A stretch of DNA of 64,000 nucleotides from Fimbriosthenelais zetlandica (lineage: Eukaryota). Both the position numbers and the translations under genes were made by a program. This document shows positions 10,069 through 51,035 of the stretch, in pieces. Where the stretch lies: assembly GCA_977030845.1 (NCBI GenBank), contig OZ365110.1:30070001-30134000 (forward strand), read 5' to 3'. Positions within the stretch are counted from its first letter, which is position 1, and every line of letters begins with the position of its first letter. A model generated the notes under the pieces. That model searched no databases. It saw nothing but the letters and a program-made list of their open reading frames with translations, and had not been told where the DNA came from.

Positions 10069-10190
10069 TTTCTATGCTTTTTGGGCTGAACACACAGAAT
10101 TTTGGACAAGTTTCCGATCTAGAATAAACGGAATGAATAAAGTTTCGGGCGACGAGAAATGTTTTTCCGTCTCACAAGCTGACAACAAGG

Positions 10191-10267
10191 TTTCCCGCGT
10201 GACTATCGTTTCCGCCCAAGCTGGTCACATGATAAATAAATCACGTGGTACGTGGACAAAATGGCGG
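10191..10267. promoter_or_regulatory. Shared divergent promoter of EFCAB9 and the sugar transporter
   Basis: Lies between ATG 10068 (-) and ATG 10385 (+). Contains TTTCCCGC (10191), GTCACATGA (10224), TCACGTGG (10241) and CAAAATGGCGG (10257, YY1-type). Confidence 0.55.
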
Positions 10268-10384
10268 ACGAATAAACAAGGGACAACGAAAACGACGGGC
10301 GAGGGGAGTTTGGTTTTTGCATTCAGTGTGGATAACACCGCAATAACCGACCGAAATAATCAATATCTGAGAGATTCTAAAACC

Positions 10385-11932
10385 ATGGATCGCGATGAAG
10401 TCGGTGTTCCTCTTTTACACGATGCTGCAGGCTCAAATTCCCCGCTAATCCAACACCCGGCTGACGACGATGACGATGTGTTCACATTCCGTCCTATACA
10501 TCAGGCAAAACCGCCGCCTGGATCATCGCTGTCGCCAGTTTACAGGCAAAAAACTCCAAAATTCAGGCAGATTCTTGCTACTGTCATCTGTGCCTTCGCT
10601 CCTCTTTCTTTCGGACTGGTCCTAGGGTATTCATCTCCCACCATATCTGGATTAACAAAGGATGGCATACTGGATAAAAGTAGAGAAACATGGTTCGCTT
10701 CTGTCCCCACCTTGGGCGCCCTCGTTGGGGCCTTGGTGGGCGGATTCTCCATCAACAAGATAGGAAGGAAGGGTACACTGATTGCTTGTGGTTTACCCTT
10801 TGTCATCGGTTGGGGAATGATTATCTTTGTCAAATTAACATCTTCATACCCATTACTTCTTGCTGGTCGAGCCGTTTGCGGGGCCTCTATGGGTGTTGTC
10901 TGCACAGCTGCACCAACATACATCGGAGAAATAGCATCCCCCGATATGAGGGGGGCTCTGGGTACCGTCTTTCAAGTTGCAACATGTTTAGGAATTTTCA
11001 TGGCTTTTATCGTTGGTATACCACTCAGTTGGCAGTGGTTGGCTGTCGTTTGTTTAGCAACGAATGTGCTCATGACTATTCTCATGGTATTTGTTCCTGA
11101 AACACCAAGATATCTTGCAGCAAAAGGGTTAGATGCCCAAGCTAGAAATTCTCTTAAATGGCTCCGTGGGAACAGTTACGATATCGAAGAGGAATATGAA
11201 GAAATCACTGCCCAAATCGATGCTAATCCCGACACTTCTATCACCATAAGTGACTTAAAAAAGAAATCAATTTACAAGCCAGTTTTGTTAAGCATGGGTC
11301 TGATGTTTTTCCAACAAAGCAGTGGCATCAACGATATTGTCTTCTATGCTGAATCTATCTTCAACAATGTTCCTCAAACAATGCCAAATTCGACCAAGTC
11401 AACCACTGCTGCAGTCTTTGCCAATCCTGCCATTCCTGGGGTGATAATCACAGCCGTCCAAGTCGTAGCTACTGCTTCTTCTCTTTTTGTGATAGACCGG
11501 CTCGGTCGGAGGATCCTACTGAGTATTTCAGGGAGTCTCATGTGTGTTGGTTGTATAACAATGGGGGTGAATTACTACATACAAGAACACAATCACCAAG
11601 CTGGATATTCTTGGCTGCCCATCGCTTCATTGATTCTCTTTGTGACTGCTTTCAGTCTTGGATTTGGACCTGTTCCGTGGACACTCATGGCCGAGTTAGT
11701 TCCCTCCAGAGTTAAAGGCGTGGCCAGCGGTATTGCAGTTGTCACGAATTGGCTCACTGCCTTTATAATTACTAAAGAATTTGTTGATTTAGAAAGAGGT
11801 ATCCACCAGTATGGGACCTTCTGGTTGTTTGCTGGCATCAATGCCTTGGGTGTGATTTATGTATTCCTCCTCCTGCCAGAAACCAAAGGCAAATCTCTTG
11901 AAGAAATCGAACAATTCTTCTCTTCAATTTAG
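10385..11932 (+). CDS. Intronless MFS sugar porter, GLUT8/GLUT6 (SLC2A8)/Tret1-like
   Basis: Single ORF with about 12 hydrophobic segments and sugar-porter motifs (IGRK, YIGEIA, PETPRYL, FFQQSSGIN, IDRLGRR, GFGPVPW, LPETKGKSLEEIE). The frame is open from 10133, but ATG 10385 (aaccATGG, downstream of promoter motifs) is the preferred start. Confidence 0.92.
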   Translation: MDRDEVGVPLLHDAAGSNSPLIQHPADDDDDVFTFRPIHQAKPPPGSSLSPVYRQKTPKFRQILATVICAFAPLSFGLVLGYSSPTISGLTKDGILDKSRETWFASVPTLGALVGALVGGFSINKIGRKGTLIACGLPFVIGWGMIIFVKLTSSYPLLLAGRAVCGASMGVVCTAAPTYIGEIASPDMRGALGTVFQVATCLGIFMAFIVGIPLSWQWLAVVCLATNVLMTILMVFVPETPRYLAAKGLDAQARNSLKWLRGNSYDIEEEYEEITAQIDANPDTSITISDLKKKSIYKPVLLSMGLMFFQQSSGINDIVFYAESIFNNVPQTMPNSTKSTTAAVFANPAIPGVIITAVQVVATASSLFVIDRLGRRILLSISGSLMCVGCITMGVNYYIQEHNHQAGYSWLPIASLILFVTAFSLGFGPVPWTLMAELVPSRVKGVASGIAVVTNWLTAFIITKEFVDLERGIHQYGTFWLFAGINALGVIYVFLLLPETKGKSLEEIEQFFSSI

Positions 11933-14290: not shown

Positions 14291-15937
14291 CTGAGCCTCG
14301 ATCTTAAAACCCTTTGATTTGTGCACAGACGACTTAGTCCACTGACCCATCGAGATTGTTAATGGAAACAGCGCTGTGGACAAACTTATACTAGACTGAA
14401 TATTGCTAAACTTCATAACACATGCTTATTTTCGAACTATGTATATTAATAATGTCTTTCTCCACATTAGAAAGACTAATTTTCCATTGCCATCCATTGG
14501 AAGCACCTTTCTAGTAGAGTTACCAAAATATAGGCCTACAATTCCAAAATTAGATTAAACAGTCTCTAATTATCTGTGTATATAGGATAAGTACTCCTCT
14601 ATCATACCTCCATTTTACTTAGAAATCCGAATACAATTAAGTGAGAAATAAATAAATTGAAAAAAAAAATAAAACCACTTGATTCGGTTGTGCAATGCTC
14701 TAAGCGGACGCCTAACAGGTTAGGCCAGGAAGCTACGGCCATTGCATCATTCCAGAACTTGAAGTGTTTCGTACGAGATGATTTGCCTCGAGATTTTAGA
14801 GCCAACATTACATAGAAATCGCATCCATCTTGTGTTTTTTAATGAGAAATCCTTTAGAAAATATATATTGTTTGTCAATATTTATTTAATTGTTTAATGA
14901 AGAGGATGAGTATAACTTCTTTCATGAAGAAAGACCCTGTGTATTTTAGCTGGCTAAAAGGGAATCCGAGGCAACCAAAGCCTTGGGGTCACTGGGTCCA
15001 TGACTGGGTCAAAGTGACACATTTACTGTATACATTCATGTGAGGAGTCAATGAAGCTGCTGCCATCTACTGTCAACTACCGTGGTGAATTTTTTCCTAC
15101 TATGGTGGCCCAAAGGTGAAAAATAAATAGGAAAAGTAAATGTGAAATAGTACTTTTTGGAGTTATTAGATCCTTCCCTCCCTTGTTGTTATAGACTTAA
15201 GAGAACCTAAGGTACATTTTGTCCCCACCTGCATGGGCAATTATCTATTTTAATATAAAAATACATTTCTAAATGTTCTATGTGATTAAACTGGTGCTAA
15301 TGCTCCTCCGTGAGGGATGAACAGTTATGCAGTTAAAACAGAGTAGCACATGTACTAATATTCTCCCGATATCTATCATTGAAATAAGAATTAATTTGGC
15401 CATTTTTTTCAATTGATTAGTCAGAAAACCCACAGAAATCTATCCTAAATAAAAAAGAAGAGGCCCATAACTTATATATAATTATTCTCTTGAGAAAAGG
15501 GCCTGTCAGTCACTTAAAATTATTTTTGAGAAAATGACGACCGGTACATCTGGTCATAGGTCAAAATTAGGTCACTTTCAGAATCAAGTCACAGGTCAGG
15601 TTGACCTATTTTTCCTAAAATCAAATGACAGGACCTGGACGTATATTAGGCATAACTATCACATGGTCCACTGGTTTCCCTCCCCACCTTAACATGACCA
15701 CAAAGCCACCGGAATATTACAGTAATCGCTTTGTGATTACAAGTAGACTAGTGAGCAATGTAATTAATAGGCTTCTGTTCAGGCCTACTTAACATTCTAC
15801 AAATCCATAATTGTGATACAATGAACGTTGTATTCCTGGTCAAATGTTGGATTTACTATCCCTGTGAATGATTACCCTGGAATGAAGATAGAGTTATATT
15901 AGATTTAAAATCCTAGGGCAAGGCCTAATCAAGTAAT

Positions 15938-16680
15938 CACTGTAGAACACCGGAAGGGGGTAACGCGCGTAACCTTCCTCAAAATGGCGGCCAAAACACC
16001 GCTCGCTTCGGTAAGTTTTCCTCATTTTTCTCCCATTTAGAGTTATCAGAATGACATCAAAAGTAGTGAGACTGTTAGGAAAAGTGTGCTTGATCTTCTC
16101 GATCTGTTTACTCGGTCTAGTTCACGGCAAAAGCCGCTAAAATAGCCCTCAAAGTGCGAGTCGGTGAGGAGGGTAACTGTCCTGAGGGAGGAGGGTTATT
16201 CCCCCATATGAACAGAGATGAGGAGGGTAACTATCGTTAGTTTTGCTGAATGTACCAACCATTTACAGCCACTTTATCAAAATATTGACATAGGAAACTT
16301 ATGAACAGAAGAAGGTTGCACTGTTGCATCCTATTTAACCGTATTTTGTATGAAATACATGTGGAAACATAACATATTATTTAGTCAGTTACCCTCCTCA
16401 ATCACAGAGTTACCCTCCTCAGGTGTCAAAACCGATGACAGTTACCCTCCTCACCGACTCGCACTTTGAGGGCTATTTTAGCGGCTTTTGCCGTGAACTA
16501 GACCGAGTAAACAGATCGAGAAGATCAAGCACACTTTTCCTAACAGTCTCACTACTTTTGATGTCATTCTGATAACTCTAAATGGGTGAAAAATGAGGAA
16601 AACTTACCGAAGCGAGCGGTGTTTTGGCCGCCATTTTGAGGAAGGTTACGCGCGTTACCCCCTTCCGGTGTTCCACAGTG
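15938..16680. mobile_element. Non-autonomous DNA transposon (MITE/foldback), 743 bp, 244-bp TIRs, 5-bp TSD GTAAT; Transib/RAG-like superfamily signature
   Basis: 15938-16181 is the reverse complement of 16437-16680 with 2 mismatches that I could find. Termini are CACTGT(A/G)...CACAGTG. GTAAT lies at 15933-15937 and 16681-16685. Subterminal GAGGAGGGTAAC-type motifs occur three times on each side. No internal ORF. Confidence 0.9.
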
Positions 16681-18796
16681 GTAATGGTATTTTCAGTTTT
16701 TAGTCATGTCAATTCAAGGCCTTGTACTTGCAGTGATTCCACTATTTAACCAAAAACACTAGATAATTTTGATTTAACTGTGACATCCCTTATTGCCTAT
16801 CCTATTTAGCTATTAAATACACTCTCAGCTCTAAGAGTTAGCCCATCCCATAAGCCAACCAAAATAAACATCCCTGACCTAGTGGAAGGTCGGCCATTTT
16901 GTCTGTTATTGAAAAGAACCAGCTGGGCAGGAGGTGTGTTTAAATCCAGCCTTCTGATTGGCTGATGGTGACAAGCCCCTGACTGAATCCGTGTCATCAC
17001 GGTTTTCTCCTCCGTCTCCCTATTCACCGAGAAAGAGATTTCATTTTCTTCCTTTTATACTATTTCACCAAAGACCATCTATTTCACATTGACATCATTA
17101 TCAAGCCCTGGTCTTCACTGGACCCGATTTCTTCAAGGGTAAGACCTTTTTTGTGTTCTAATCAATATATGGCATGCAGACATCAACAGTAGAATAATGT
17201 GGCTGGCAGCACTATACTAGGACCCGCAGTGGATGGACCATGGAGGAACCTTTTTTCCTTGATCCCTTCATAGCATATTATGGCAGGTGAATTATATAAA
17301 TATAAGGGCATAGACCTGTAACCACGAAGCTAATTTGCCCTTAGGTCAAATTTCTCATGCAGAAATATATATCAAGATATTTGCTACCTAGCTTAATTTA
17401 TTGATGTTATGATAATATCCCTGCATCCATATTAATATTCATGACGGCCTACACATCAATTGCACACAGTAGCCTACCATCCATGTTACATCTCCAATTA
17501 CATATCACAAATACTAATTAGGCTTTTGTCGTTTATTTAGGCCACGAGAGTCCCATCAATTTTCCTTATAGGAAAGAGTTGAAGAAAGCAAGAATTCTTC
17601 TGCTGAGACAAACTAAAAGTATGAAAAATAAGACAGGTTAAATAATACGGGTGGCTCAGTTCTGGCTGGCTGCGTTCGAATGTAGGCCCCTACACACAAT
17701 TATATGGGATGCGCTCTATTCCCACTTTGGCTTTTGGGCAATTCCCATCCCATCCACAGGTAACGTAGCCTACATTCTGTTATGCAATTACACTAAATGT
17801 ACATGTAGGCCTAATTGGTGAAATTAGGAACAATGTAAGACTAGCACTGTAGCAGGCGCTTATCTAAGGCTGTGAGAGAAGATTCTTCGCCGCTCAATAG
17901 ACCTAGCGCTAGTAGGCTTATAATATAGTTATTAACTTAATATACAAGAAAGCATAATACAAGAATATAAAACATCCCCACCCACCCATCCCGCCTCACC
18001 CGCCGTTTTCACATTCGACGCTTCTGCTGACGGTTTGATTTAGGTATTGCACGGTTGGTGGCGCGGCAAGCAGAAGGAACTATCAGATTCGCGCCAGTTT
18101 TATGGATATGGTGATTATGATAATAATGATCCTTGGGAAAGCAAACATTAAGTGGGCAGAACCTTTGGATTAACGATAGGTTAATCCTCCTACAGGCTGT
18201 AAGATTGGACCTTGTCCTCTATAGACTACTAGACTAATGTAAGCCTATTATATAATGCTGAACCTTGGTTCTCTGAATCAAGGTTCATTGTGCATGGACC
18301 CATATGCCATATTGAGCACGATGTACCATATTTGTATTTGCCATGTTACTTACTCAACTTGGGCCACAAGGAGTAGAATGTATACGTACATAACTTAGTC
18401 TACATGTACATCTGTACTCTTACCTATCGCGCCAATTCAAGTTATTTTTATCCAAGGAGCAACAGGTAGGCCTATTATAATGGCAACTAGATTTATACTT
18501 GTTCAATCTCGAATTGTGGTGAATTTGAGGGAAAATAACTCTCCAAGCTTACAAACTGGAAACAAGTTTGTACATGAGATAGATCTGTCCGTATATCTTA
18601 ACGCTCTGGGACACGTGTTTAAATGTCGAATTTGTGACGAGATTTATGCTGTATGCAGATCTATTTTTCATAAGGAAGAGAATGCATGCTTGTTGAATAT
18701 AAAATGTATTCAAATACATAATTTATACATTTTTTAACGTTTAATTTTATTTATTTTTTTAAAATCTTCTTTTTCTCTTCTTGCAGTGAAAGGAAA

Positions 18797-20803
18797 ATGT
18801 CTGTTCACGAGGATACGGCCGTTCTAAACTTCTGTATTGATAACTACGATGGCAAATTGGTCAGGAAAATACACAAATTATCAAAGTCGAAACAATGCTG
18901 TGATGTGGTATTGGTATGTAATGGCGTCAGTGTCCATACCCACAGGGTGATTCTCTGTGCTGGTAGTCAGTACTTTGCCACACTATTCTCTGACCGCTGG
19001 TCACCGTCAGTGTCTCATGATGTCTCGCATCTCTTCTCTGAGAGTAAATTACTAGAGGCATTTGTCAGTTTCATGTACACTGGAAAGATTAAGATCACTA
19101 ACGATAACATAGATGAAATACTGAATGCTGGTACACATCTACTAGTGGATGATCTCCGTGACGTCTGTTCTAAGTATTTGGTGGCCAATCTCTCGCCTAA
19201 GAATTGCCTTTGTATATGGTTGCTTGCTGAGAAATATCACTTAGTCGAAGTTTTTCAGCTCTGTAAAGAGATAACAATTAGTCGTTTCCAAGACTACCTT
19301 ATCCACAAAGAATCCACACTGGAGCTGGCTCCAGACTTCCTGGAGAAGATCGTGGGTGAAGGTGTGCTGCATTTAGTGTCTCAAGCTGATCGTGTTAGAT
19401 TTTTGTTAAAATGGCAGAATCATCAAGAAGACAGAATACTGAGTGATGTCCTGCTGAAATATGCGCCAGAGATTGAAAATGAGAAGTATCTGTCAGATTT
19501 AGGTGTTAGTGATGTGCCATCCGATGAAGGAATGGACGTGGATTGTCAATCAACTCCCCCAAGCCCAATTCACAAGAAACATTTAGTAACTGGTAAGGAG
19601 GAGCAGGTGGAGGCCATCTTTACCTTCACGTACCAAGCATGCTACATCAATATCTATGTCTATTTGAGAAATCACAATCAGTGGAGACACCTGGGGAGAT
19701 TTAATGATAATGAGTTTGGTTTCATCACTAGCTCCAGCCTGGTAGGTTTTCTGGGTCTGCTGGCAATATATGATGATGGCATCGAAGAAAGTTGTTCACT
19801 AGTTGACTTCCAGAACAAATCAGTGAAATCCCTCAAGTGTCCCAGTAATGGGCACAACTCCAGCAGACAAATTTTCTGTTTCAATGGGAAGATCATGCTA
19901 CTGCATGAGAGCAAGTGCAGAAAAGGTAATACCAGTGAAATCGCCCTCTTTGTTTTAGAGCCAAACTTGATGGAATGGCAGAAGGAGCTGGCCACTGAAA
20001 TGACTAAACTCTACCCTGAGTACTCGTGCCGTACGAAGATTTCCTACTCTGTTATAACCTCACGGGGTAAAGCATACATCTGGGCCCAGGATGTGAGCTC
20101 TAACACCTCTGGGCCTTTCTGGATGGTTCTGCAACCGGAAGCAAGTGGGAAGTATGTCATACAACCTCTGGCAAACCCACCAGTATCAATGGCAGACCTG
20201 AGGATTCTTACCCCAATGTCCCTCCGTGGCTGGAAACATGCCACCTTTCGACTAGCAACTGATTCCCACAAAATCTTTGTTTACAGAAGCAAGACTTTAA
20301 CATCCCAAACGATGAAGTATGACATGCTCTTATCATACGACAAAGAAACGGATTCGTGGACAAGAAAAGACAACGTCGTTGCAGACATCCCTAAGAGCAT
20401 TGATGTCCCTGTGACATCAAGACAGTTATCATCTGGTAAAACCTACGTGCAATTGGACCAGAAGTGCAAAGTGCAGTCTCATTTACATGGCTGTACTTAC
20501 GTCATAGAGAAAGCTTGCCCATTTGTAGCAAGACTCTGGGCTCACAGTCTCTCTGATAACTCCTGGAATCCCATGGCACCGCCCCCTATTGAAAACATGG
20601 CTTCTTTTCAGTCATATCACATAGTCAGCTTGGCCAGGTCCGTGAGTAATGCTCTGCAAGGGACAGCATCATTTGGCGGGGCAAATGAAGACTCAGATCA
20701 CAGTCCTATGGTGCATTGGGAGTTGGATGTGAAGGGACGGACATCCAAGATAGAGCTGCAGTCTGCTGCTGCATTCATGTTACAACAATGTACCCATGGC
20801 TGA
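18797..20803 (+). CDS. Intronless BTB-BACK protein with degenerate Kelch-like C-terminus (KLHL/KBTBD-like, putative Cul3 adaptor)
   Basis: 668-aa ORF. CDVVLVCNGVSVHTHRVILCAGSQYF...FVSFMYTGKI is a BTB domain and LSPKNCLCIWLLAEKYHL is BACK. C-terminal Trp-ending units (YDKETDSW, LSDNSWNPMAPPP) suggest a Kelch propeller. A splice acceptor (pyrimidine tract + CAG ending at 18786) indicates a 5' UTR intron. Confidence 0.85.
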   Translation: MSVHEDTAVLNFCIDNYDGKLVRKIHKLSKSKQCCDVVLVCNGVSVHTHRVILCAGSQYFATLFSDRWSPSVSHDVSHLFSESKLLEAFVSFMYTGKIKITNDNIDEILNAGTHLLVDDLRDVCSKYLVANLSPKNCLCIWLLAEKYHLVEVFQLCKEITISRFQDYLIHKESTLELAPDFLEKIVGEGVLHLVSQADRVRFLLKWQNHQEDRILSDVLLKYAPEIENEKYLSDLGVSDVPSDEGMDVDCQSTPPSPIHKKHLVTGKEEQVEAIFTFTYQACYINIYVYLRNHNQWRHLGRFNDNEFGFITSSSLVGFLGLLAIYDDGIEESCSLVDFQNKSVKSLKCPSNGHNSSRQIFCFNGKIMLLHESKCRKGNTSEIALFVLEPNLMEWQKELATEMTKLYPEYSCRTKISYSVITSRGKAYIWAQDVSSNTSGPFWMVLQPEASGKYVIQPLANPPVSMADLRILTPMSLRGWKHATFRLATDSHKIFVYRSKTLTSQTMKYDMLLSYDKETDSWTRKDNVVADIPKSIDVPVTSRQLSSGKTYVQLDQKCKVQSHLHGCTYVIEKACPFVARLWAHSLSDNSWNPMAPPPIENMASFQSYHIVSLARSVSNALQGTASFGGANEDSDHSPMVHWELDVKGRTSKIELQSAAAFMLQQCTHG

Positions 20804-32488: not shown

Positions 32489-35400
32489 ATAGTGTAGAAC
32501 AACGAGCACAAAATCTAAAACCCCATTTTCCCCATAAAGGGGAAATGGGATTAATTACCACTCGCTCCCATTGCTGTCGTTAATTTTGCTAGGTCAATTT
32601 GAATTTTGATAGTTTATAAAATAAATTTATAAGGATGCCCATGGTACCGGTATAAGCTAAGGCGACTACGATATAGTTCATCATTAATTTTAGTCTTTAT
32701 GGTTTCATTAAATATACTGTTTTAAATTCTGTCAATGATCAATCGTTTTTTACAGCTCGTCAACCTTGAGCCACTCCTAAAGAGCCGAACAGCAGAAGTG
32801 GAAGCACTCAAATTGGAGCTGAAGTAAGACCTTCTTTTCGTTACTTATTTTGAGGGGGATCCTAAAACATTATATTAATTTAAAATGTGCACATAGAGAA
32901 CATAATATATTTTGAATCAAATCCGAATTTATGTAATGTTTCTTACCAGTTTCAGGCTATTTTAATTGATTGTTCCTGGTTGAATTTTGATTGAACGCAG
33001 GTATTTACTGTGTCAGGGCTACTCATATCACTGATCTGTGATCTTATTTACAGGCAGGTGTCTAATGCTAAATCTGATATGGAGACTTCCCGTTTGAAGC
33101 TGGAGGAAAAAATAACCAGTCTAACCGCCTCCAGTCAAGAGATCCAGAAACAACTCACTGCCCAGCGCACTGTCCTCGAGAAGGAGTATGCGGAGAAACA
33201 GGAAGCCCGGGATGCTGAAAGTCGGGGAGAAATAGCAATACTGCAGTCCATGGTGAGCACTCTTCTTCATACATCGTGAAGTAATTAAGAAAGGCAATTA
33301 TATATACAGATAAAATGAATTCCCTAAAGTCCGGATCACCCTGCTTCAAATGCTTTAGATTAGGGTTCCCGCGCTGCATTAAAAAGTCTTTAATTGGTTC
33401 TGGAAAATTTAAGGCCTTAAAACGTCCTCGGCCTTTTTGGTTTATATCAAAGTCTTAAAAAAAGTCTTCTAAAAATGCTGACTATACTACTGGCGATTTG
33501 ATTGGCAATTTTGCCGGCTACTAATTTATCGTCCGAAAGTATGGATTTTAGGTCTTAAAAATAAAGATCATAGGTCTTAAGTTTTATCATCTCAGAACCG
33601 CAGGAACCCTGTAGATGCTTTCCAGATTGATTGCCCCTTCAATAATTCTTGTGATATTATATATGGATGTGTAGTAAATTTGTGTTATCTTTAGGTTGAC
33701 TCATCTAACGAGGAATTAATGGCAGTTCAGAGTGAGCTTAGTGAAGTGCGGCAGGAATCTGAAAATGCCAGACTGAGTATGAACACCAAGGTAAATGCGC
33801 TGGAAGCGGAGAAAAAACATGCCGACACAGAAATGAATCAACTAAACACTCAGATGTCAACAACGACAGCCAAGTTGGACGACATGACAGCTCAACTCAA
33901 GCAAGCCCAGGAAAAACAACAACAGATGCTTCAGGAATTAGAGGAGAAACGTAGCAGCATGGCGGCCATGAAGGCCGAAATTACAGCTCTGACCGAAAGC
34001 AAGCAGAGACTATGTGGTGATCTGGAAGAGCAGAGAGTAGCTGGGAAAGAGGAGAGCAAACTACACAACGAGTATAAAGAGAAGACCGAGAATGTGGTGG
34101 CCAATCTGAGGGATGAGTTGAAGAAGCTGGAGGCTGAGAAACATGCCCTCAACCAAGAGGAACTCAAGCTCAACCAGTCTCTAGGACAGAAGGACGAACT
34201 CATTGGACACCAAGAGGCTCAGTTACATGAAAAAGACCGGCAAGTTGAACTGAGGAAACAGGAATTAGAGCAAATCACAGAGGATTTCAATGGTGCAAAA
34301 TCTCAGCTTAACACTCTAAACACTGAGAAGGCTTTGGTTGAGGGCAAGCTTGTCAGTGCCATAGATGAGATTGAGAAATTCAAATTAGAGGCAAAGGAGT
34401 CGGCCTGCAAGTTTGAAGGTTTGATAAATGAACTTCGATCTCAACTGGAGAATTCAGAACAAGAGAAGGACAAGGCCATGAAAGATGTCAGTATGCTCCA
34501 CGCCCAGCTGGAAGCAAGCCAAGAAAATATTGACAAGCTGAACAACTCATTAAAAGATAGTGAAGAGAAAAGTAACCTAAGGACACAAGAGAGTGATCAA
34601 CTGAAAATTGAGCTCGATGAATCGCAAACTTTGATCAGTAATCTCCTAAAGAATTTGGATGAAGTACAGAAAAAGTTGGATGATTTAGAGATCACTAACA
34701 AAGACCTGAGCTCCAAGATGGCTGACGCCAGTTTAAAATCTGAGAATATAACCACAGAATTGAGACAGGAAGGTGATCTCCTGAGAGAACAGAAATCAAG
34801 CCTCGAGAAGGAAAAGTGTGAACTATGTGAGAAGCTGAAGATGAAGGAAGATGAACTTGAGAGAACACGACTGGAGGTGGAGGAGGTGAGACAGCAGGCA
34901 ACCCTGGCCAACCAGGAACGTGAAAACCTGAAAACAGAAAGTACAACATTGACAGAGCAACTATCCCATCTACAGCAGACCAAAGCAGTAGTTGATGCTC
35001 AGTTGGAGGAAAAAATAGATGCCCTAAGTGAAGAAAAGAGAGAAAGTTGTGAATTTAGAACTAAAACAGAAGCTCTCATTGCAAATCTAAGAGATCAAAT
35101 ACAATGTTTAGAGACAAACAAGGTAACTGCAGATTCGGAGAACAAGAAATTATCTGAAGACTTAATTCAGAAGGAAAAATTCAATGAAGATGTCATGAAA
35201 AACCTCCAGGAATTGTCTGAGAAAAAGGACCAATTGCTTCAAGATATATCTGAGCAGAGGTCATTAGTAGAAAGACTGCAGGAGCAGGTATCAACCCTGA
35301 CTGCTGATAAAGACAGCCTGGAAGGCCAGCTTGAGTCAAAATCTGATCATCTCACCCAGACTGAGAACCAATTCCAGGAATATAGAAAGAAATCAGAGGA

Positions 35401-38400
35401 TTACATGACTGAATTGAAGGCCAAGATTGAGGGCCTGGTGTCTGAGAAAGCAGCTGTAGAGGGGCAGATCAATGAGCTTCAATTCAAGCTAGAATCCAGC
35501 CAGGAAGATGTGGAATCACTCAATATTACCGTGAAGAAACTGGAGGAGCAGCAGGAACAGATGAAGCAGGAGTGTTCTCAACTAAAGGACACAAACCAGA
35601 GCCTCCACACTCAACTGACTGACTTGACGAATGAAAAGGAATCACTGGAAGGAAAGTTAGAAACAGAGACTGATCAACTCAAAGACAGAGAGATGGAATT
35701 GCTTGAATCCAAGAAGAAATCCGAAAGTTATGTGAGTGAATTAAATGGAAAGATTGAGGGTCTGGTGTCTGAGAAAGCAGCTGTAGAGGGGCAGGTCAAT
35801 GAGCTTCATTTCAAGCTAGAATCGAGCCAGGAAGATGTGGAATCATTGAACATTACCGTGAAGAAACTGGAAGAGCAGCAGGAACAGATGAAGCAGGAGT
35901 GTTCTCAACTGAAGAACGTGGTTGAAAGCCACCAGAATGAACTTACTGAGATGAAAAAAGAAAAGGAGTCTCTTGAGGGGAAACTTGAGTCAGAGACTGA
36001 TCAACTTAAACAAACAGGCGAGGAATTGCTTGAATCAAAGAAGAAATCTGAGGGTTATGTAAATGAACTGAAAAGTAAGATTGAAAGCCTGAACAGTGAA
36101 AAAGTGGTGGTAGAAAGATTGGTTGAGGAACTCCGATTTAATCTTGAATCCAGTCAGGAAGACATTGAATCACTGAACATTACTGTCAAGAAGCTAGAAG
36201 AGCAACAGGAACAGAAGAAGCAGGAGTGTTCTCAACAGAAAGACAGCATCCAAAACCTCCAGACTGAGGTGATAGAGCTAAAGAAAGAGAAGGAAACACT
36301 GGAAGGAAAACTAGAGTCTGAGTGTGATCAGCTCAAAGAAAAAGAAACCGAGATGCTCGAGTCAAAGAAGAAATCTGAGTGTTACCTGGATGAGTTGAAA
36401 ATGAAAATCGAGAGTCTTACCTCTGAGAAATCAGCAGTTGATAAACTTGTTGAAGATATGACATTCAAGCTAGAATCCAGTCAGGAGGATGTGACATCTC
36501 TCCACCTAACAGTGAAAAGTCTAGAGGAAAAACAGGAACATTTGAGGCATGAATGTTCTCAACTGAAAGATACCATTCAAAATCTTCACACTGAACTGAC
36601 TGACCTTAAAAAAGAAAAAGAATCACTGGAAGGAAAGTTGGAATCCGAGACTGATCAACTCAAAGAAAGAGAAGGAGAATTGCTTGAATCAAAGAAGAAA
36701 TCGGAAAGTTATGTGAGTGAATTAAATGGAAAGATTGAGGGTCTGGTGTCTGAGAAAGCAGCTGTAGAGGTGCAGGTCAATGAGCTTCAATTCAAGCTAG
36801 AATCCAGCCAGGAAGATGTGGAATCACTCAATATTACCGTGAAGAAACTGGAGGAGCAGCAGGAACAGATGAAGCAGGAATGTTCTCAACTAAAGGACAC
36901 AAACCAGAGCCTTCACACCCAACTGACGGACTTGACGAAAGAAAAAGAATCACTGGAAGGAAAGTTAGAGTCTGAACAGGACAGATACAACGAAGCAGCA
37001 GACCAGTTGGTCTCCTCCACTGAGAAATCCCAGTCATTGGTGGCAGACCTAGAGAGGCAAATAAAGTGTCTGATGGAGGAGAAAGCAGGTTTAGAGAAGG
37101 AGGTAAATGAGGCCGGGTTCAAGCTGGATTGTGGGCAGAGTGACTTGGAGGATATGACTGAACAGTGGAAAGAAATCTGCTGTAAACTGCAGCAGGCAAC
37201 GCAGGAGAGTGGAGAACTCAAAAACAGGATTCCCTCCCTGGAGGAGGAAAAGGTGAAGCTAGAGACAAGTAAAGAGAAGATACAGGAAGAGTTGAAACTC
37301 AGTATTGAAGAACACAACACAACACAGGAGAAATATACTGAGCTGCAGATCAAGTCAGACAGCTTTGAGAAAGAGATGAAAACTAAATTCTCCCTACTTG
37401 AAGAAGAAAAGTCTAAAGTTGAGAAGGAGATTCAGGAACTGATGTGCACTGTAGATTCTAAAGGTGAAGGTCTTGAGAGTGCCAACCTCCAAATCGATAG
37501 TTTAACAGTTTCGCTAAGTCAACAGGAACAACAGATTCAACAACTAAATCAGGAGATAACAGATCTTAACCAAAAGTTCCTGACAGAAACTGCTGATAAG
37601 GAAACACTTGGTGAGAAAGCTTCAGCAGCAGAGGCTGAACTGAAGCAACTGAAAGAGGAAAACGCTGAAACTATCACTAAACTGCAAGCGGCACATCAGC
37701 AACTGACAGAGCAGGTGACTGCTCTTAAAGATCAGCATGAGAAAACGTGTGCTGAACTCACGTCTCGAGAAACTGAAGTGGGAGAATTAGAGGAGAGAAT
37801 GAGAGAAGTGAAGGAGGAGGTGGAGTTGAAGAAGGAAAAGGTGGAGCAGTTAGAGCAGCAGCTTGAGACTGTAACTGGCCAGCGGGAAGCACTGAGAGCT
37901 GAACTGGATGTAACAGAGCGAGAGAAGAACTCCCTGCTCAATAATCTGGATGGTCTGACAGAGGAGGAGAAGGGGTGGAAAAAGCTTCAGGAGGAATACA
38001 TGACAGAGAGACAGAATTTGCGCAGTCAAATCACTCAAATGAAAGAAGAAGCAAACTGCCAGGAATCCAGGCTGAAAGAGGCCCATGATGAACTATTGCA
38101 GATCCAAGGAGCATTAGAGGAGAGCAACTCTCAGAAAACGCAGGTTTTAGAGAATGAAGAGCTGCTCCAATCTAACATCACTGGCCTCAAAACACAAGCT
38201 GAGAAACTCCAGGCAAGTATCCAAACCCAGGAGGACAGGGTATCAGAACTAGAGGCTGTCCTCGGTCAGAAAGAAGCCACAATGGAAGACCTGCAGAAGA
38301 GTCTAGATGAGGCAGAGGAGGTCTTACACGAGGAACAGAGAACGACTGCTCAGAGGATCCAAGAGAAAGACCGTGAAATGCGCTCACTCTCTGAAGAGAA

Positions 38401-41400
38401 AGAAAAGCTAGCAGACGATTCACAACAGTTGAAACATGATCTTAAGGAAGCAGAGGAGGAGATGGAGAGTTTGAGGGCAGAGAAGGAGGGAATACAGAGG
38501 AAACTAGTTGAGATGAAAACTGAGCTTAGTTGGGAGAAGGAACGCCTCGAAGACCAGAACAAAGACTTAGAAGGCCAAATCATAGCCCTCAAACTGGAAA
38601 TAGAAGCCCATCAAAGTACTCTGATGATGAGGGAGACTGAAATCAGTGATCTGGTAATTAATCAACAGAATATTATGACAGAGGTACATGCTGAACATGA
38701 AAGGATCAATGAGGATTTCAGAGTTCGTTGTAATGAGCTAGAGTACAAGCAGTCCGAGACTAAGAAGCTCATGGATGAAGTAATAGAGCAGCACAATCTC
38801 AAAATCGCAGAGATGGAAAATGAAAAGTCTGAACTCAGTGCTAGTCTAAAGAAGGAACAAATTGTAAACGAAGAGCTCAGAAGAACTGGTGAAGTAGAGC
38901 AGGAACTTAAAAAATCCAAACTGGCAGCATTAGAGGAAGAAAATAGTTTTGCAGTACAAACTGTCCGTGAAGAAAAGGAAAAACTGGAGACTGAGATCAA
39001 CTATTTACACCAGGAAATCTCTCAGCATAAGGATGAAGCCAACAAAATTGCGATTGACGTGGCCCAGAAAATAGCAACCCTGGAGGCAGAGAAGGTGGAA
39101 GTTGAAAATGTACGTCTAGCAAAAGAGGAGGAAATAAAAAGCCTTGTGGTTCAAAAAGAGGAACTACAAAAGAAAATGTCAGATAGCATGAACATGATTG
39201 AAAACCTTGGAAGTGCCATACAAAATTCTGAGGTGGATATGCAACACAAGATCCAGAGCCTGTCAGAAGAACTCGCCAAAGCTGAGTTTGAGAAAGCTGA
39301 GCTGAAGGGAGAAGTGGAGAAAGCAGAGGTTCACAGAAAAGCCATGGAAGAACAACACTTGCAGGAGGACAAATGTATCAAGGAAAAATTAGATTTTGAG
39401 TTGGAACAAAGCAAACTGAAGGAAGCATCCATCTATGAACTTGAGGTGAGATCAGTGACGCTAGAGAGTGAATTGAAACTTAAAGATGCTCAGATTGAAA
39501 CTCTAAAGAAGGATCTTGATTCAGAAATTTCAAGGGCTGCCGGCAGTATACAGGAACTTGAATCTCAAGTTGAAGCACTGCAAGAGGAAAGTGCAAATTT
39601 AGAGACGGAGTTGAATCAAATTAAGTCAGAAAAGGAGTCCTATGAATTAGAGGCTTGTGAAAAACTAAAGGTAGAAGACTCAAAATATAAACAGGTACTG
39701 AAGGAAAGAGAGGAGGAGAAGGCACTTCTTGAAAAACAGATGGAAAACTTAAAAGATGAGCATAAGTTTGAAGTGGACGCACTGCATAAAGAAGTGGATG
39801 AAAGCAAAGAAAGATCTACTGAGCTTCAGTCAAAACTTCAAAGGCTGCAGGATTCATACTCCCAGGAGGCAGTTGAGAGAGGGCAGCAGATGGCCATGCT
39901 AGAGCAGATGAAAGAAGAACTAATGGCCAGTCAGAGCAGCTCTGAGCAGCAACATCTCGCGATGCAACAGGAGTTAGAGTCTGTAAAAGTTAAACTCACC
40001 GAGATGACACTTGAGGCGGAAAAAACAAAGCAAGACTTGGAATCCAGCCAAGCCAGTCTGGGTCATGATCTACATGAATTGCAGAATGAACGTGATAAAT
40101 TAGTGTATGAGAAGACTCAGCTTGAAGAACGGTTGGAGAAGGAAGCTCTCATAACTGAGGAAGCTACGACCAGGCAGGCATCTGAAGTCTGTCATCTGAA
40201 TGACAAATTAGATGAGCTCAGCAGGAAATGTGCTGAGAAAGAAGAGATTGCCAGTGAACTTGAGAGACGCCTATCAGACAATGCTGAGCAACTTGTCTTG
40301 AAGCAGAACGAAATAGAAGAACTTGAAAATAAACTGGAAATGGAACAGTTGCAGATACGCAAGATAGAATCAGAGATGCAGACCCAGACAGACGAGCTCA
40401 AATTTAAGATTGAGACTTGTGATACCAAGATAGAACAACTTGAACAGGAGAAAGAAGAGAAAATCAGTGAATTGAAAGAGGAACTCAGAGAAGAGATTAT
40501 TAGAATGACAAATCTCATTGAGGCAGCTGCTCAGGAACAGGCTGAACAGGAGATTAAATTAAAGGCACTCGAAGAGGAGAAAACATTCACAGTTGAAACA
40601 TTACAAGCAGAGAAAGAAGCAATTGAGTCTGAATTGACTGAATGCAAGAGCAGCTTAGCTTCACTGAAGGATGCTTCCAATAAAACAAATTCAGAGACAG
40701 TACAGCAAATAACTGAGCTGACCTCAGAGAAGACACAGATAGAAGAAATGAAAATTTCCCTAGAGATGCAAGTGAAAGATCTGACAGCAGAGAATGAAGC
40801 GATAGAAGAGAGACACCAGGAAGAGCTCCAGGCTAAAGAGGCTGAGACCCTCAAAATAAAGTCTGAGTTGGAGAGAGTTCTCGATGAGAATAAAGATCAG
40901 ATTGAAGCCCTGACGCTCAGCCAGGAAGAGGGACAACAGGAAATGAATCTGAAAGAAAGAGAAATAAAGGAGCAGTTAGCAGAATTAAGCAGAGAGGTGG
41001 AAGACCTGAAAGCTGAGCTCTCCAAGTCTAAAGAAGATTTCTCCATCCAGTGTTCCTCCTTATCATCTGATCATCATGTCACACTCTCACAAGTCATGGA
41101 GGAGAGGAACCAACTTCAGTCTAAACTAGAGAAGGTTGAGGAACTCTCTAAGCAGGACAAGGATTCCCTCAATACAACTATCAAGGAAAAATCTGAAGAA
41201 ATCTTGCAGCTTGAGAACGACATGAAACAGGTTAGGGTGGATCTGGAGGCCACAGAAACAGAACTGACAGCCACGACTGAAAAGCTTGAAAAACTAACAG
41301 AAGATGTAGAGAGTGCCGACTGTGCATTGAAAAAACTGGAAGTAGAGCTGGAAAATGGCAATGCCTTATTAATATCAGAAAGAAATGGTCACGCAGAACA

Positions 41401-44400
41401 ACTAAGTGAACTCGAAAGTCAATTGAACCTGAAATGTTCAGAATATGAAACGATTGAGAAAGAACTGGTGCACATCCAAGATGAGAATGCTCGGGTACTG
41501 AAGGAAAAGGAAGAACTGGAGACATCACTTCACAAAGCTAATGATGAATATAACAAGTTGAAGGACCTGGAACAAGAATGGGTCGAACGGACTGAAGAGG
41601 TGGAGAAGGAACTTGATGAAATGACTAATGAGAAGAATAAGCTGGAGGAAAGACAGCAACTGATCGAGCGGCAGGAAAGTGAGATGATGAGTGAGAAAAC
41701 AGAGATAGAGGACAGATTGAACAGCAGGGAGGAAGAACTATTAACAATGAAGGAACAGTCTGACTCATTAAGGTCCCAGGTGTCTCAGCTGGAGGCAGAA
41801 ATGGAGGCCTTACAAAAGAACAATAATCTCCTTTCTACTGATAAAGACGGCATTAATGCTGAGCTTCAAGCACTAAGGGATCTGGAGGAAAAGGCCAGGG
41901 TTGAGGTCGATGAGCTGGAAACCACCCAAGAAAACCTGACCCAAAAGGTGGATGATTTAGAGGAAAAGATATCTGACCTGAAAAAAGAAAATGAAACGCA
42001 TAAGTCACAAATCAAGTACCTCGGGGAGACGGTGGATACTTTGTCAGATTCTAAAGACAAGTGTGACTTGTTGGCAACAGAAAATTGCCAGCTTAAGAAC
42101 CTGATTGAGGAAAATGCCTGTGACACTCGGCGCTCACTTGAGCTGCTGCAGCAAGATCTGATGCGGCGGGAGAAAAAGATGGAGACACTAAACAAGCAAC
42201 TAGAGGATCATCAGTTGTCCCTGGAAAGCCTGGAGGTTGAGAAACAAGAGGCGTTACAAGAAATTGATACATTGAAATCAGAAATTTCTACTGGGAAAAT
42301 AACACAAGCTGGCCTGGAAGAGAAGCTCAGAAAAGCTCAGGAAGAGCTTGAAAGTGAGGAAAAGAAGACTCAGGAACAGGAGGCCATTTGTGAAGAGAAA
42401 GACATGGAACTCTCAGCCTGGGCAAGTGAAAAAACCGATCTAGAATCAGAGCTTAAAATCAAGGAAGAGGAGGTGTTGGCCCTGAAGGAAAAAGTAGAGA
42501 CTGATACGAAGGAGAAGGAAGACCTAGAAGGGAAAATAGAAAAAATGGAGGCACAGCTTGAAAAGTTAGGTGAGAAGAAGGAAAAGTTAGAAGTCGACCA
42601 CATGCTGGAGTTAGATGCAGAACATGACCGCTTCCTTCAGGTACAAGAGGAGATGAGAGGCGTCAAAGCTGCCCTGGAGCAAAATGCTAGAGACCTGGAG
42701 AAGGCAGAGGAGGAGCGAAGAGTGCTGGAGGAGCAGACCAACCTGCTGGAGGCCCGACTTAGTGAATTAACAGAGGAAAAGACTGAAGTGGAGAGAGAAA
42801 TATCAGAACTACGTGAAAGTCATGCCAGGGATAAGAAGTTAATAGAAGAGCGACTTACAGAGAGAAACAAGGACAATAATGAGTTGTTGAACCGAATGCT
42901 CCAGAACGAGGACATGATCTCTTCCCTCACAAGCTCCAAGAGTGAGTTAAGGGAAGAACTGACCAACTGCCAGTCCAAGTTAGAAGCCACAGTACAGCAG
43001 CTACAAGCACTGCAAGACACTGGGAAGCAGGAGGTACAACAGCTAAGTCAGGATCACCAGATGGAAATAACAGCCTTACAGACAGAGAAAGATCATCTCA
43101 CTACTGAGCTGGCCCAGGCTGAGGTGGAACTCAAACTCAAACAACAAGAACTGGAGGTGTCCCGCCAGACCGGGGAGAAAGACACAGAGTTGGTGAAACA
43201 GCTGAAAGAAGAGATGGGGGAGATAGAGGAGGAGATAAAGAGAGTTAGGGGCGAGGCTGAAGAGAAGGAGGTAGAAGTTACAAGGCTAAGATCTGAAATT
43301 ACATCTGCCCAGACCCAGATGCAGCAATCTACCGAGGCCCTGAGCAACAAACTTGAGGCAGTACAGTCAGGTGCAGATGAGCATGTAGAGACTCTGAAGT
43401 ATGAAATAGAATCCCTCAAGCGAGAACGGGACAGGTTGAAGAAGGCCGGTGCAATGAGTGAAAAGACAATGAAGGAGGCTTATAGTCAGAAGGAAGACGA
43501 ACTGATGGAGAGGTTAGACGAAGCAGAGCAGAAAGTCACTTCATTGACCTCCAAGGTAGGCACTTTACAAGACCAACTAAAAGCACGAGTCAGCCAAGCC
43601 AAGGCATTAAGCCGAGACCACACCAAGCAGGCACTGCAACTCTCACAACTGGAGGCTGAGGTGAAGAGACTGAAGGAGGAGGATACAGAGAGGGAGAACC
43701 AGCTCTCTGCTGTTCAAGATTCACTCTCACAGCTCAAACAAAGTAACAAACAACTAGAGACTGAGAATTTAAAATACAAGACACAAATGGGGGCACTCAG
43801 CGCACAGCTTGAGAGTGCGCTCAATTCCCTACACACGGCGGAAAACACAGCCAAACATGACATGGAACAAGCCAGAATGAAGGTAAATTATTCTTTGCTA
43901 CACAAAATTCAAACTGGGCTTTACTTGTAGTTGGTAAATAACATTTTCAAATATGTTGAGGGTCTATAAACTAATGTTACTAATATTGGGCAGGGGGTGA
44001 GGGCGGGATCACATTCCTGTTACTTAATATAATTATCTGTGGTTTAGCCATTTTATCATTGATATCAATTATCATATGTATGTAGAGAATGTATGGTGTA
44101 ATATTAAACGTATTAAACCATTTTGGCAGCATGAGGAAGAGATACACCAGCTGGAGGAGAAGTTAAAACAGAGAAACAAAGCCCTCTCACCACGACGGAC
44201 ACGAGGACGTAAGGTAGATATGAATTAAAATATTTTCAGTAAGGGACTTGTGTTTATGGGTTTTTTTTAGTTACAATTTTTATAGAGCCTGTTATGTGTG
44301 AATACCAGCTCACACTCTTGATTGCTCAAGTTTCTCGTATGATTTTATGTTATGTTTCTTTATGTATATATTGATTGAAGTCCGATATAATCATTTTTGT

Positions 44401-49368: not shown

Positions 49369-50235
49369 TTTATACTACAACCGTCCAATTTAGCCAGAAC
49401 CGCCCAGGAGAAGGCTAAATCACAATGTATATAATTATTTAGCCCCCGGATCCCTCCCTGGCCCCCAACCTCCACCACAACCCCCATGTCTACATCCAGC
49501 ACTCCCACCAACTCCCTCCAAATACACCAGCCCGATTTGAAACGGCTAACATGTCAAAATCCCTTGGAATAGCCCACTGTGTAGGTACTGTCCATAGGCG
49601 CCAATGTTAAAAATTATTTAGCCCCCCGTATCCCTCCCTGGCCCCCAACCTCCACCACAACCCCCATGTCTACATCCAGCACTCCCACCAACTCCCTCCA
49701 AATACACCAGCCCGATTTGAAACGGCTAACATGTCAAAATCCCTTGGAATAGCCCACTGTGTAGGTACTGTCCATAGGCGCCAATGTTAAAAATTATTTA
49801 GCCCCCCGGACCCCTCCCCGGCCCCCAACCTCTACCCCAACCTCCATGTCTACCCGTAGTACCCACCCCAACATTCTCCCAAAAATTCAGCCCGATCCTA
49901 TGCTTCTAACCTGTCTAAATCCACTGGATTCTACAAAAGTGTCCCGCCCATAGGCTCAATGTTAAAAATCACTCACGATTACATGGATGAGTGCTACAGA
50001 GCCGGTTTGTCAGTCCACTCAAATCGGCTTTTCTCTACCTAATACATATTATTTTCACTCAAGTCCACGGTTATGTATAACTTATGACCTCTACTGATAA
50101 ACCCCAAAAGAGCCGAGACGAAAAACCAGGAAATCCCCGATTTCTGCGAAGTTGACAAATCGGCCCTGCGTATACAGGCCTATAATTTGGCCTTTTAAAA
50201 ACCTTAACAGCGCCCTCTCACTAAAAGTCGACAAA

Positions 50236-51035
50236 GTTGAATAACTTTGTAAATAATGGGTCTAAAATTACAATTCAAACGGATTATTCTTAGTTGGAAG
50301 CACCTCCAGGTATCTATGTGTTTTTTGTGCAACTAAAATTAATTTAAAATTTCGATTTTTGAAAATGTTGCCAATTTGAGGTCTTAGCATTGGACTCTAT
50401 GGAAGGAGCAGCCTGCGCGACTGAAGCGACCCGAGATTGACGCGGCAGAAAGGTGAACTATTCTACTATGATCTACCCAACGCACCGAGAAGGGAGTAGA
50501 GAGCTTTGACTAGATCATATGACTGTAGTTCGCCGTTTCGCCGCTGTATAGGCCTATCTAGGGAGAGAACGTTCAGGACTCCTAGCCTTTCCTATAGCCT
50601 ACATGCACAAGGCCTACCATTTCCCATGTAATAAGGCCCATGCTCGGCGTCCATTCTAGGCCTACCATTTCCCATGTATGCCTACATATCACAAGGCCTA
50701 TATACCCTTGCTAGGCGTTCCTTCACTATTTCCCATACATATCACAAGCCCTATGCACAAGTTGCTGGGGGTTCCTTGTCTTTCATTCAGGCTATGCTGG
50801 CTGGCGCATAGTAGTTCCCGTTTCCGCCGCTAGGATATCTCGGGTCGCCACTGGCGATAAGGCGTCTCCTTCCATTGATTCCAATGCTAATTGAAGAAAT
50901 TCAGTCCATTTTCAAAATCCGAAATTTTAAATCAATTTTCTCGCTTCAAAAACCTGGCCACTGTTTAGAATACTTCCCAACTAAGAATAATCCGTTTAGT
51001 TTGTATTTTTAGACCCCTCTATTGCGGAGATATTT
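50236..51035. mobile_element. Diverged foldback/MITE with ~235-bp inverted arms
   Basis: Left arm gggtctaaaa..aaacggattattcttagttgg..ttagcattgga..tggaaggag..gcgacccgagat pairs with right arm atctcgggtcgc..ctccttcca..tccaatgctaa..ccaactaagaataatccgttt..ttttagaccc. The exact ends and TSD are not resolvable. Confidence 0.7.

What the first reader, a model, noticed from the sequence alone, without database searches (positions are those of the whole stretch)
15933..16685. Young Transib/RAG-like non-autonomous transposon: CAC termini, 5-bp TSD, heptamer-like ends
Seen in sequence: 743-bp element with 244-bp TIRs differing at about 2 positions (recent insertion), ends CACTGT(A/G), an exact 5-bp direct flank GTAAT (2-, 3- and 4-bp flanks do not match), three subterminal GAGGAGGGTAAC-type motifs per side, and no ORF. 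Established: CAC termini plus a 5-bp TSD characterise Transib and RAG-like transposons (amphioxus ProtoRAG ends begin CACTATG; the V(D)J RSS heptamer is CACAGTG). CACTA/EnSpm and Chapaev have 2-4-bp TSDs. Inference: a recently active Transib or RAG1/2-like autonomous partner exists elsewhere in this genome. No RSS nonamer lies at 12- or 23-bp spacing, and the TIRs are symmetric.
Basis: partly seen in the sequence, partly recalled or inferred. Interest (0 to 1): 0.78.

Follow-up and report, generated by a model that had tools for sequence, protein, structure and literature searches.

The report
Young CAC-ended non-autonomous DNA transposon
A real 743-base jumping gene with no gene of its own sits between two genes of a probable annelid worm. 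Its ends and 5-base target duplication best fit the Transib family (relatives of the antibody-gene recombinase RAG1), but only one copy and no parent element could be reached, so the family assignment is a best guess and the element itself is ordinary.

Summary
Window 15938-16680 is a 743-bp element with 244-bp terminal inverted repeats that differ at 2 positions. Its ends are CACTGTA.../...CACAGTG, it is flanked by an exact 5-bp direct repeat GTAAT, and it has repeated GAGGAGGGTAAC motifs and no gene.

It is a non-autonomous, palindromic cut-and-paste DNA transposon in the spacer between a sugar-transporter gene and a BTB gene. By the usual convention (terminal sequence plus duplication length) it is Transib-type, and I put that at about 0.55.

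Three Transib features fail or are absent:
- there is no A-rich nonamer at 12 or 23 bp;
- the target is AT-rich;
- the long repeats and subterminal motifs look more CACTA-like.

Nothing points specifically to RAG1/RAG2-like elements. No second copy, empty site or transposase could be reached: the window, public collections, sequencing-run index and protein collection were all blank. The claim of a recently active partner is therefore untested.

This scan had already noted six other CAC-ended, 5-bp-duplication elements elsewhere in the same genome. One has the identical 753-letter span 9.87 Mb upstream, and one follow-up reached the same limited verdict. These notes are unchecked leads.

Verdict: a new member of a known kind, of low to moderate interest.

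The parts
15933..15937 (.). left target-site duplication GTAAT
   Evidence: identical to 16681-16685; the sixth base differs
15938..16181 (+). left terminal inverted repeat, 244 bp, begins CACTGTA
   Evidence: 242/244 complementary to the right arm
15958..15964 (+). terminal GGGTAAC core (positions 21-27 of the end), same core as the subterminal motifs; mirrored at 16654-16660
   Evidence: 7 of the 12 GGGTAAC in the window lie in the element
15981..16016 (+). AAAATGGCGGC (YY1-consensus-like), ATG plus 9 codons (MAAKTPLAS), then GTAAGT: exon-1-like piece inside the repeat; mirrored in the right arm (motif at 16627-16637)
   Evidence: sequence read directly; the functional reading is inference
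16166..16231 (+). left subterminal motifs: GAGGAGGGTAAC at 16166 and 16220, degenerate GAGGAGGGTTAT at 16189
16182..16436 (.). 255-bp non-palindromic core, AT-richer and CpG-poor (o/e 0.31), no ORF
16388..16452 (-). right subterminal motifs: GAGGAGGGTAAC on the minus strand at 16388, 16409 and 16441
16437..16680 (-). right terminal inverted repeat, 244 bp, ends ...CACAGTG
16681..16685 (.). right target-site duplication GTAAT

Best explanation
This is a non-autonomous, palindromic (MITE-like) cut-and-paste DNA transposon. It inserted at a GTAAT site in the roughly 6.9-kb spacer between a sugar-transporter gene and a BTB gene.

It has no gene, so a transposase encoded elsewhere must move it. That enzyme recognises the CAC-type ends and cuts the target with a 5-bp stagger. 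The gap is then repaired into the GTAAT duplication. The enzyme probably also binds the GGGTAAC-core sites, one at positions 21-27 of each end and three subterminal copies per side.

The most likely enzyme is a Transib-superfamily (RAG1-core-like DDE) transposase. Such an enzyme would release the element by nicking at the CAC and forming hairpins on the flanking DNA.

Both ends are the same sequence, and each carries a promoter-proximal-looking piece: a YY1-like site, an ATG, nine codons and a 5' splice site. The element is therefore probably a fold-back derivative of the 5' end of its parent.

Shown here: the anatomy, the duplication, and the enrichment of the motif. Inferred: the enzyme family, the binding-site role, the origin from one end, and the age.
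For: - Anatomy and exact 5-bp duplication.
- The motif is confined to the element.
- There is no coding capacity, no RNA family and no tRNA.
- CpG is undecayed in the arms and there are only 2 differences in 244 bp.
- CAC ends plus 5-bp duplications are the signature given for Transib and RAG-like elements. hAT ends always have G at the third base and make 8-bp duplications (PMC1131882). CMC elements make 2-4-bp duplications.
- Repbase classifies non-autonomous elements by exactly these features (PMC4455052).
- Unchecked scan notes list six more CAC-ended, 5-bp-duplication elements in this genome, one with the identical span.
Against: - The call rests on a single insertion.
- There is no A-rich nonamer-like block 12 or 23 bp after the heptamer, although the Transib consensus is CACAATG + 23 bp + AAAAAAATC.
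- The target is AT-rich: 34% GC over 35 bp and 27% over 15 bp. Transib prefers GC-rich sites.
- 244-bp repeats and subterminal motif clusters are typical of CACTA, hAT or Mutator ends rather than described Transibs.
- No Transib/RAG1-like ORF has been noted so far in 685 scanned windows of this genome, while a CACTA/EnSpm autonomous element has been.
- Duplication length and end sequence are labile within the Transib lineage, so they cannot prove membership.
Confidence: 0.55

Rival explanations
1. It is a non-autonomous member of a CACTA/Mirage/Chapaev-type lineage, or of an undescribed lineage, whose transposase happens to make 5-bp duplications. The subterminal GAGGAGGGTAAC clusters would then be binding sites for a TnpA-like accessory protein, as in En/Spm.
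For: - The ends begin CACTG, one base away from CACTA.
- Clustered subterminal repeats are present in both orientations.
- An exon-1-like leader lies inside the end.
- An unchecked scan note describes an intact-looking CACTA/EnSpm element with a tiny shared first exon in this genome.
- Duplication length is evolutionarily labile among related transposases.
Against: - Described CMC elements make 2-4-bp duplications. SmTRC1 makes 2 bp.
- At this copy the 2-, 3- and 4-bp flanks do not match, while the 5-bp flank is exact.
- The animal CACTA-related ends reported for SmTRC1, Aedes aegypti and Tribolium castaneum begin CCC.
Confidence: 0.25
2. It is mobilised by a RAG-like (RAG1L-RAG2L) transposon rather than a plain Transib. 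That would place ProtoRAG-type elements in annelids.
For: - CAC ends and a 5-bp duplication are shared with RAG-like elements. Non-autonomous RAG-like elements are known in an oyster and several deuterostomes (PMC7204232).
- The pattern CACT.T..AAC is shared with the oyster end CACTATCAAACC (8 of 12).
Against: - Only 10 of 17 positions fit the protostome consensus CACTWMCAAACKTYKBB, and the conserved AAA at positions 8-10 is GAA here.
- No RAG1L or RAG2L ORF has been noted in this genome.
- Annelids are not mentioned in any of the four RAG-like/Transib survey papers searched for the word.
- From my own background knowledge, Transibs are far commoner than RAG-like elements.
Confidence: 0.07
3. 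It belongs to another known superfamily (hAT, Mutator, PIF/Harbinger, Ginger2/TDD, Polinton-derived), and the boundaries or the duplication have been misread.
For: - Long repeats occur in Mutator and Polinton elements.
- TDD-4/5 make 5-bp duplications.
Against: - hAT: third base is always G and the duplication is 8 bp. Here the third base is C and the duplication is 5 bp.
- 8-, 9- and 3-bp flanks do not match.
- Ginger ends are TGTNR, not CAC.
- The inverted repeat cannot be extended or shifted by a single base.
Confidence: 0.08
4. It is not mobile at all: a local inverted duplication whose 5-bp flanking repeat is chance or microhomology.
For: Only one copy could be seen.
Against: - The boundaries are sharp and sit exactly at CAC...GTG.
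- The exact 5-bp direct flank has a chance probability of about 0.001.
- The internal motif architecture is typical of transposon ends.
- Unchecked notes report similar elements elsewhere in the genome, one with the identical 753-letter span.
Confidence: 0.05

Closest known systems
Non-autonomous Transib elements (e.g. Transib-N1_AG/N2_AG of Anopheles; hopper/Kodama of Drosophila melanogaster)
   Same: CAC termini, 5-bp target duplication, no coding capacity, presumed mobilisation in trans (PMC1131882; bioRxiv 10.64898/2026.08.26.747230).
   Different: The repeats here are 244 bp against tens of bp (37 bp in Nozomi/Kodama). There is no A-rich nonamer at 23 bp. The target is AT-rich rather than GC-rich or CASTG-type. 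Subterminal motif clusters are present. The host is an annelid. The transposase link is untested.
RAG-like (ProtoRAG/RAGL-B) transposon ends and their non-autonomous derivatives
   Same: CAC start, CACT at positions 1-4, 5-bp duplication (PMC7204232).
   Different: The TR2 A-rich block fits poorly (10 of 17 to the consensus). The two ends are fully symmetric. No RAG1L/RAG2L is known in this genome or phylum from what could be read here.
V(D)J recombination signal heptamer CACAGTG
   Same: The right end reads CACAGTG on the plus strand, and the essential CAC is present at both ends.
   Different: Read inward from the flank, as an RSS is read, the ends are CACTGTG and CACTGTA, not CACAGTG. There is no ACAAAAACC-like nonamer and no 12/23 asymmetry.
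CACTA/En-Spm elements
   Same: CACT start, clustered subterminal repeats in both orientations, and a leader exon close to the end.
   Different: Those elements make 2-4-bp duplications, while this copy has exactly 5 bp. No Transposase_21 partner has been tied to these ends.

Membership tests
Transib superfamily | 5-bp target-site duplication | tested here: met
   GTAAT on both sides; other lengths fail. One copy only.
Transib superfamily | Termini begin 5'-CAC with a CACAATG-like heptamer | tested here: met
   The ends are CACTGTA and CACTGTG. Positions 1-3 are exact, and 4 to 5 of 7 positions match CACAATG.
Transib superfamily | A-rich nonamer-like block about 23 bp after the heptamer (38-bp consensus end) | tested here: not met
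   Positions 31-39 read CGTAACCTT. The nearest A-run is at positions 43-47. A GGGGTAACG block sits after a 12-bp spacer but is not A-rich (consensus).
Transib superfamily | [quoted passage not shown] | tested here: not met
   34% GC over 35 bp and 27% over 15 bp, against 39% for the window. This is a tendency rather than a rule, and n = 1.
Transib superfamily | An autonomous copy with the same ends encoding a RAG1-core-like DDE transposase | not testable with these tools
   Only this 64-kb window is readable. No copy was found in public collections or the protein collection.
RAG-like (RAG1L-RAG2L) transposons | Ends fitting CACTWMCAAACKTYKBB with AAA at positions 8-10 | tested here: not met
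   10 of 17 positions fit; positions 8-10 are GAA. 8 of 12 match an oyster end.
RAG-like (RAG1L-RAG2L) transposons | Convergent RAG1L and RAG2L genes between such ends | not testable with these tools
Scan notes record none so far.
CACTA/Mirage/Chapaev | 2-4-bp target-site duplication | tested here: not met
   2-, 3- and 4-bp flanks do not match.
CACTA/Mirage/Chapaev | CACTA-type ends with subterminal repeat clusters | tested here: inconclusive
   The ends read CACTG, not CACTA. Subterminal clusters are present.
hAT | 8-bp duplication and G at the third terminal base | tested here: not met
   The duplication is 5 bp and the third base is C.

The most novel reading that the evidence does not exclude
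The element, together with the other CAC-ended, 5-bp-duplication palindromes noted in this genome, is mobilised by a still-active RAG1L-RAG2L transposon in an annelid. An alternative version is a lineage bridging CACTA-type end architecture with Transib-type 5-bp integration. Either would extend or blur the known boundary of the RAG/Transib group.
Probability: 0.08. Interest if true: 0.6.

Novelty: new member of a known kind. Interest (0 to 1): 0.3.

Why it matters
Taken alone it matters little: it is one more short DNA transposon in an intergenic spacer.

It has some value as a probe. Its terminal 50 bp could lead straight to the parent element in the full assembly. That would show whether annelids carry a live Transib or RAG-like transposase, which the survey papers read here do not report for this phylum.

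Its fully symmetric ends would also mean that the enzyme needs no 12/23-type asymmetry between ends.

The two inverted 244-bp arms fold into a very stable hairpin and carry promoter-like and splice-donor-like pieces about 2.1 kb upstream of the BTB ORF's start codon (18797). Local effects on transcription or small-RNA production are therefore possible but untested.

Tried and rejected
1. Other copies in the window. A search with the 28-nt end allowing 3 mismatches found only the two ends. Sensitive blastn of the whole element against the masked window found nothing.
2. Public DNA.
- The terminal 23-mer gave 0 hits in metagenome, viral and genome contigs.
- The paired subterminal motif gave 33 loci, all proline/tyrosine-type coding repeats or tandem repeats with no further similarity.
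- L018 shares a 14-mer within a 27-bp repeat array, which I judge to be chance.
3. Sequencing runs.
4. Orthologous or alternative assemblies through neighbouring genes. The BTB protein is not on record, and its best relative is 60% identical on a 2.3-kb contig. That is too distant for intergenic comparison.
5. Reaching other copies through protein space.
- Eight ORF-like frames of the element are not in the collection.
- A word search with the 61-aa frame of the repeat found no candidate.
6. A paralogous empty site in the window: none.
7. Rfam and tRNA scans: blank. A SINE or structured-RNA origin is therefore not supported.
8. Searching for a Transib or RAG1L transposase in relatives was not done.
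9. Literature searches for annelid Transib reports and for ends reading CACTGTG found nothing relevant.
Full report
**Observation.** The stretch is as described.
- Reading 15800-16820 and running the repeat finder give inverted arms 15938-16181 and 16437-16680, 244 nt each, with 255 nt between them.
- A script puts the element at 743 bp with exactly two arm mismatches (position 7 A/G, position 94 T/A). Identity collapses at position 245.
- Read inward, the ends are CACTGTA and CACTGTG. The flanks are ...CAAGTAAT|element|GTAATGGT..., an exact 5-bp direct repeat. It cannot be lengthened to 6 bp or replaced by a 2-, 3-, 4-, 8- or 9-bp repeat.
- The next outward bases (T and G) cannot extend the inverted repeat, so the boundaries are fixed.
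- A 5/5 match has a chance of about 0.001 at this composition (my arithmetic).
- GAGGAGGGTAAC occurs five times in the window, all inside the element, against 0.2 expected. A sixth, degenerate copy is at 16189.
- The 7-mer core GGGTAAC also sits at positions 21-27 of each end. Seven of the 12 cores in the window are in the element.
- There is no ORF beyond 49 aa, no Rfam family and no tRNA.

**Surroundings.**
- The window is gene-dense animal DNA of about 39% GC. Earlier notes of this scan take it for an annelid genome. I did not test that.
- The element lies in a spacer between a single-exon Sugar_tr/MFS ORF (10133-11932) and a BTB ORF (18797-20803). No coding frame lies around it.
- A likely splice acceptor sits just before the BTB start codon. 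The BTB gene therefore probably has an upstream non-coding exon somewhere in this spacer.

**What it is.** Several features together identify a non-autonomous cut-and-paste DNA transposon of the palindromic, MITE-like sort:
- sharp CAC...GTG boundaries;
- an exact target duplication;
- long, near-identical inverted ends;
- clustered short motifs near both ends;
- no coding capacity.

As single-stranded DNA it folds into one long hairpin: -355.6 kcal/mol, against a mean of -81 for shuffles, z = -42.

Each arm carries AAAATGGCGGC. From memory this matches the YY1 consensus. Its ATG opens nine codons that end at GTAAGT (15981-16016, mirrored in the right arm). I read this as the promoter-proximal first exon of the parent element's gene. 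On that reading the element is a fold-back derivative of one end of its parent. This is inference.

**Age.**
- Two differences in 244 bp give an upper bound on the time since the two arms were identical, not the insertion date.
- The differences may also have been inherited from the master copy.
- The intact duplication and undecayed CpG in the arms (o/e 1.03, against 0.55 for the window and 0.31 for the core) agree with a young copy.

**Which family.**
- Kapitonov and Jurka (PMC1131882) give 5-bp duplications as the mark of Transib. They report universally conserved CAC, a consensus end CACAATG + 23 bp + AAAAAAATC, and GC-rich targets. They also state that hAT ends always have G at the third base and make 8-bp duplications.
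- Martin et al. (PMC7204232) give CAC, invariably 5-bp duplications and the consensus CACTWMCAAACKTYKBB for protostome RAG-like elements.
- Repbase classifies non-autonomous elements by duplication length and terminal sequence (PMC4455052).

On these criteria the element meets the two headline Transib features and fails hAT, CACTA/Chapaev (2-4 bp), Mutator, PIF and Ginger (TGTNR ends).

It does not meet the nonamer feature. Positions 31-39 are CGTAACCTT, and a GGGGTAACG block follows a 12-bp spacer but is not A-rich. Its target is AT-rich: 34% GC over 35 bp and 27% over 15 bp.

It fits the RAG-like consensus at 10 of 17 positions and an oyster RAG-like end (CACTATCAAACC) at 8 of 12.

Long repeats and subterminal motif clusters are more familiar from CACTA-type ends. 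An unchecked scan note reports an intact-looking CACTA/EnSpm element with a tiny first exon in this genome.

A 2026 preprint shows that duplication length (5, 3 or 2 bp) and end sequence vary among closely related Transib transposases. Its authors argue that these traits support classification by transposase but should not override it. The same caution applies in both directions here.

**Attempts to reach relatives.** None succeeded.
- The window holds no other copy or fragment and no paralogous empty site.
- The terminal 23-mer is absent from metagenome, viral and prokaryotic genome contigs.
- The paired subterminal motif found only unrelated coding or tandem repeats.
- No sequencing run was listed, so no reads could be laid.
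- The neighbouring BTB protein is not on record, and its nearest relative is 60% identical.
- ORF-like frames of the element are absent from the protein collection.
- I had no tool-supplied Transib or RAG1L sequence to search with, and I did not type one.

**Earlier notes of this scan (unchecked leads).**
- Six other CAC-ended, 5-bp-duplication elements have been noted in the same genome. One has exactly the same 753-letter span 9.87 Mb upstream on the same piece.
- One follow-up reached the same limited conclusion.
- No RAG1-like ORF has been noted in 685 windows.
- Autonomous Transibs are usually present in one or a few copies, or not at all (PMC4411706). Their absence from notes therefore says little.

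**Mechanism proposed.**
1. A transposase made elsewhere binds the ends: the heptamer plus the GGGTAAC core at positions 21-27, with the subterminal copies as extra or accessory sites.
2. It pairs the two identical ends. This implies no 12/23-type asymmetry requirement.
3. It excises the element. If the enzyme is Transib-type, this happens by nicking at CAC and forming hairpins on the flanks.
4. It integrates the element with a 5-bp stagger.

Only the 5-bp stagger is read directly from the sequence.

**Probabilities.**

| Reading | Probability |
|---|---|
| Transib-type | 0.55 |
| CACTA-like or undescribed lineage with 5-bp duplications | 0.25 |
| Another known superfamily | 0.08 |
| RAG-like specifically | 0.07 |
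| Not mobile | 0.05 |

**Verdict.** This is a new member of a known kind, of low to moderate interest. Its main use is as a probe for the parent element in the full assembly.

Noticed in passing
window 15981-16016 and mirror in 16602-16637: Each inverted arm holds AAAATGGCGGC (YY1-consensus-like, from memory). Its ATG opens nine codons (MAAKTPLAS) that end at a consensus 5' splice site, GTAAGT. It looks like a duplicated promoter-proximal first exon. The left copy points towards the BTB gene downstream; that gene's ORF starts about 2.8 kb further on, at 18797.
   Followed up: partly
window 50228-51046: An old, decayed palindromic element: arms of 70 and 103 nt at 76-77% complementarity around a GC-richer core. 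No clear termini or duplication were seen.
   Followed up: partly
window 56372-56508: A 137-bp hairpin with 57-nt arms (91% complementary, 23-nt loop) built of AAGATAAGAT-type repeats, next to a long C-run. It may be a miniature inverted-repeat element.
   Followed up: no
window 61795-61901: A hairpin with 38-nt arms (89% complementary) and a 31-nt loop.
   Followed up: no
window 18760-18797: A pyrimidine tract and ttgttcag lie just before the BTB ORF's ATG, with an in-frame stop 26 codons upstream. The BTB gene probably has an upstream non-coding exon in the spacer that holds the element.
   Followed up: no
window 33719-43930: A 3403-codon open frame with strong purine skew (GC skew about +0.2, AT skew about +0.35).
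   Followed up: no
L018 1386-1690 (metagenome contig SMVA01459190.1): About ten copies of a 27-bp unit containing CAGTTACCCTCCTC, the same 14-mer as the element's subterminal motif. The period equals nine codons and there is no other similarity, so this is probably a coding repeat and a chance match.
   Followed up: partly
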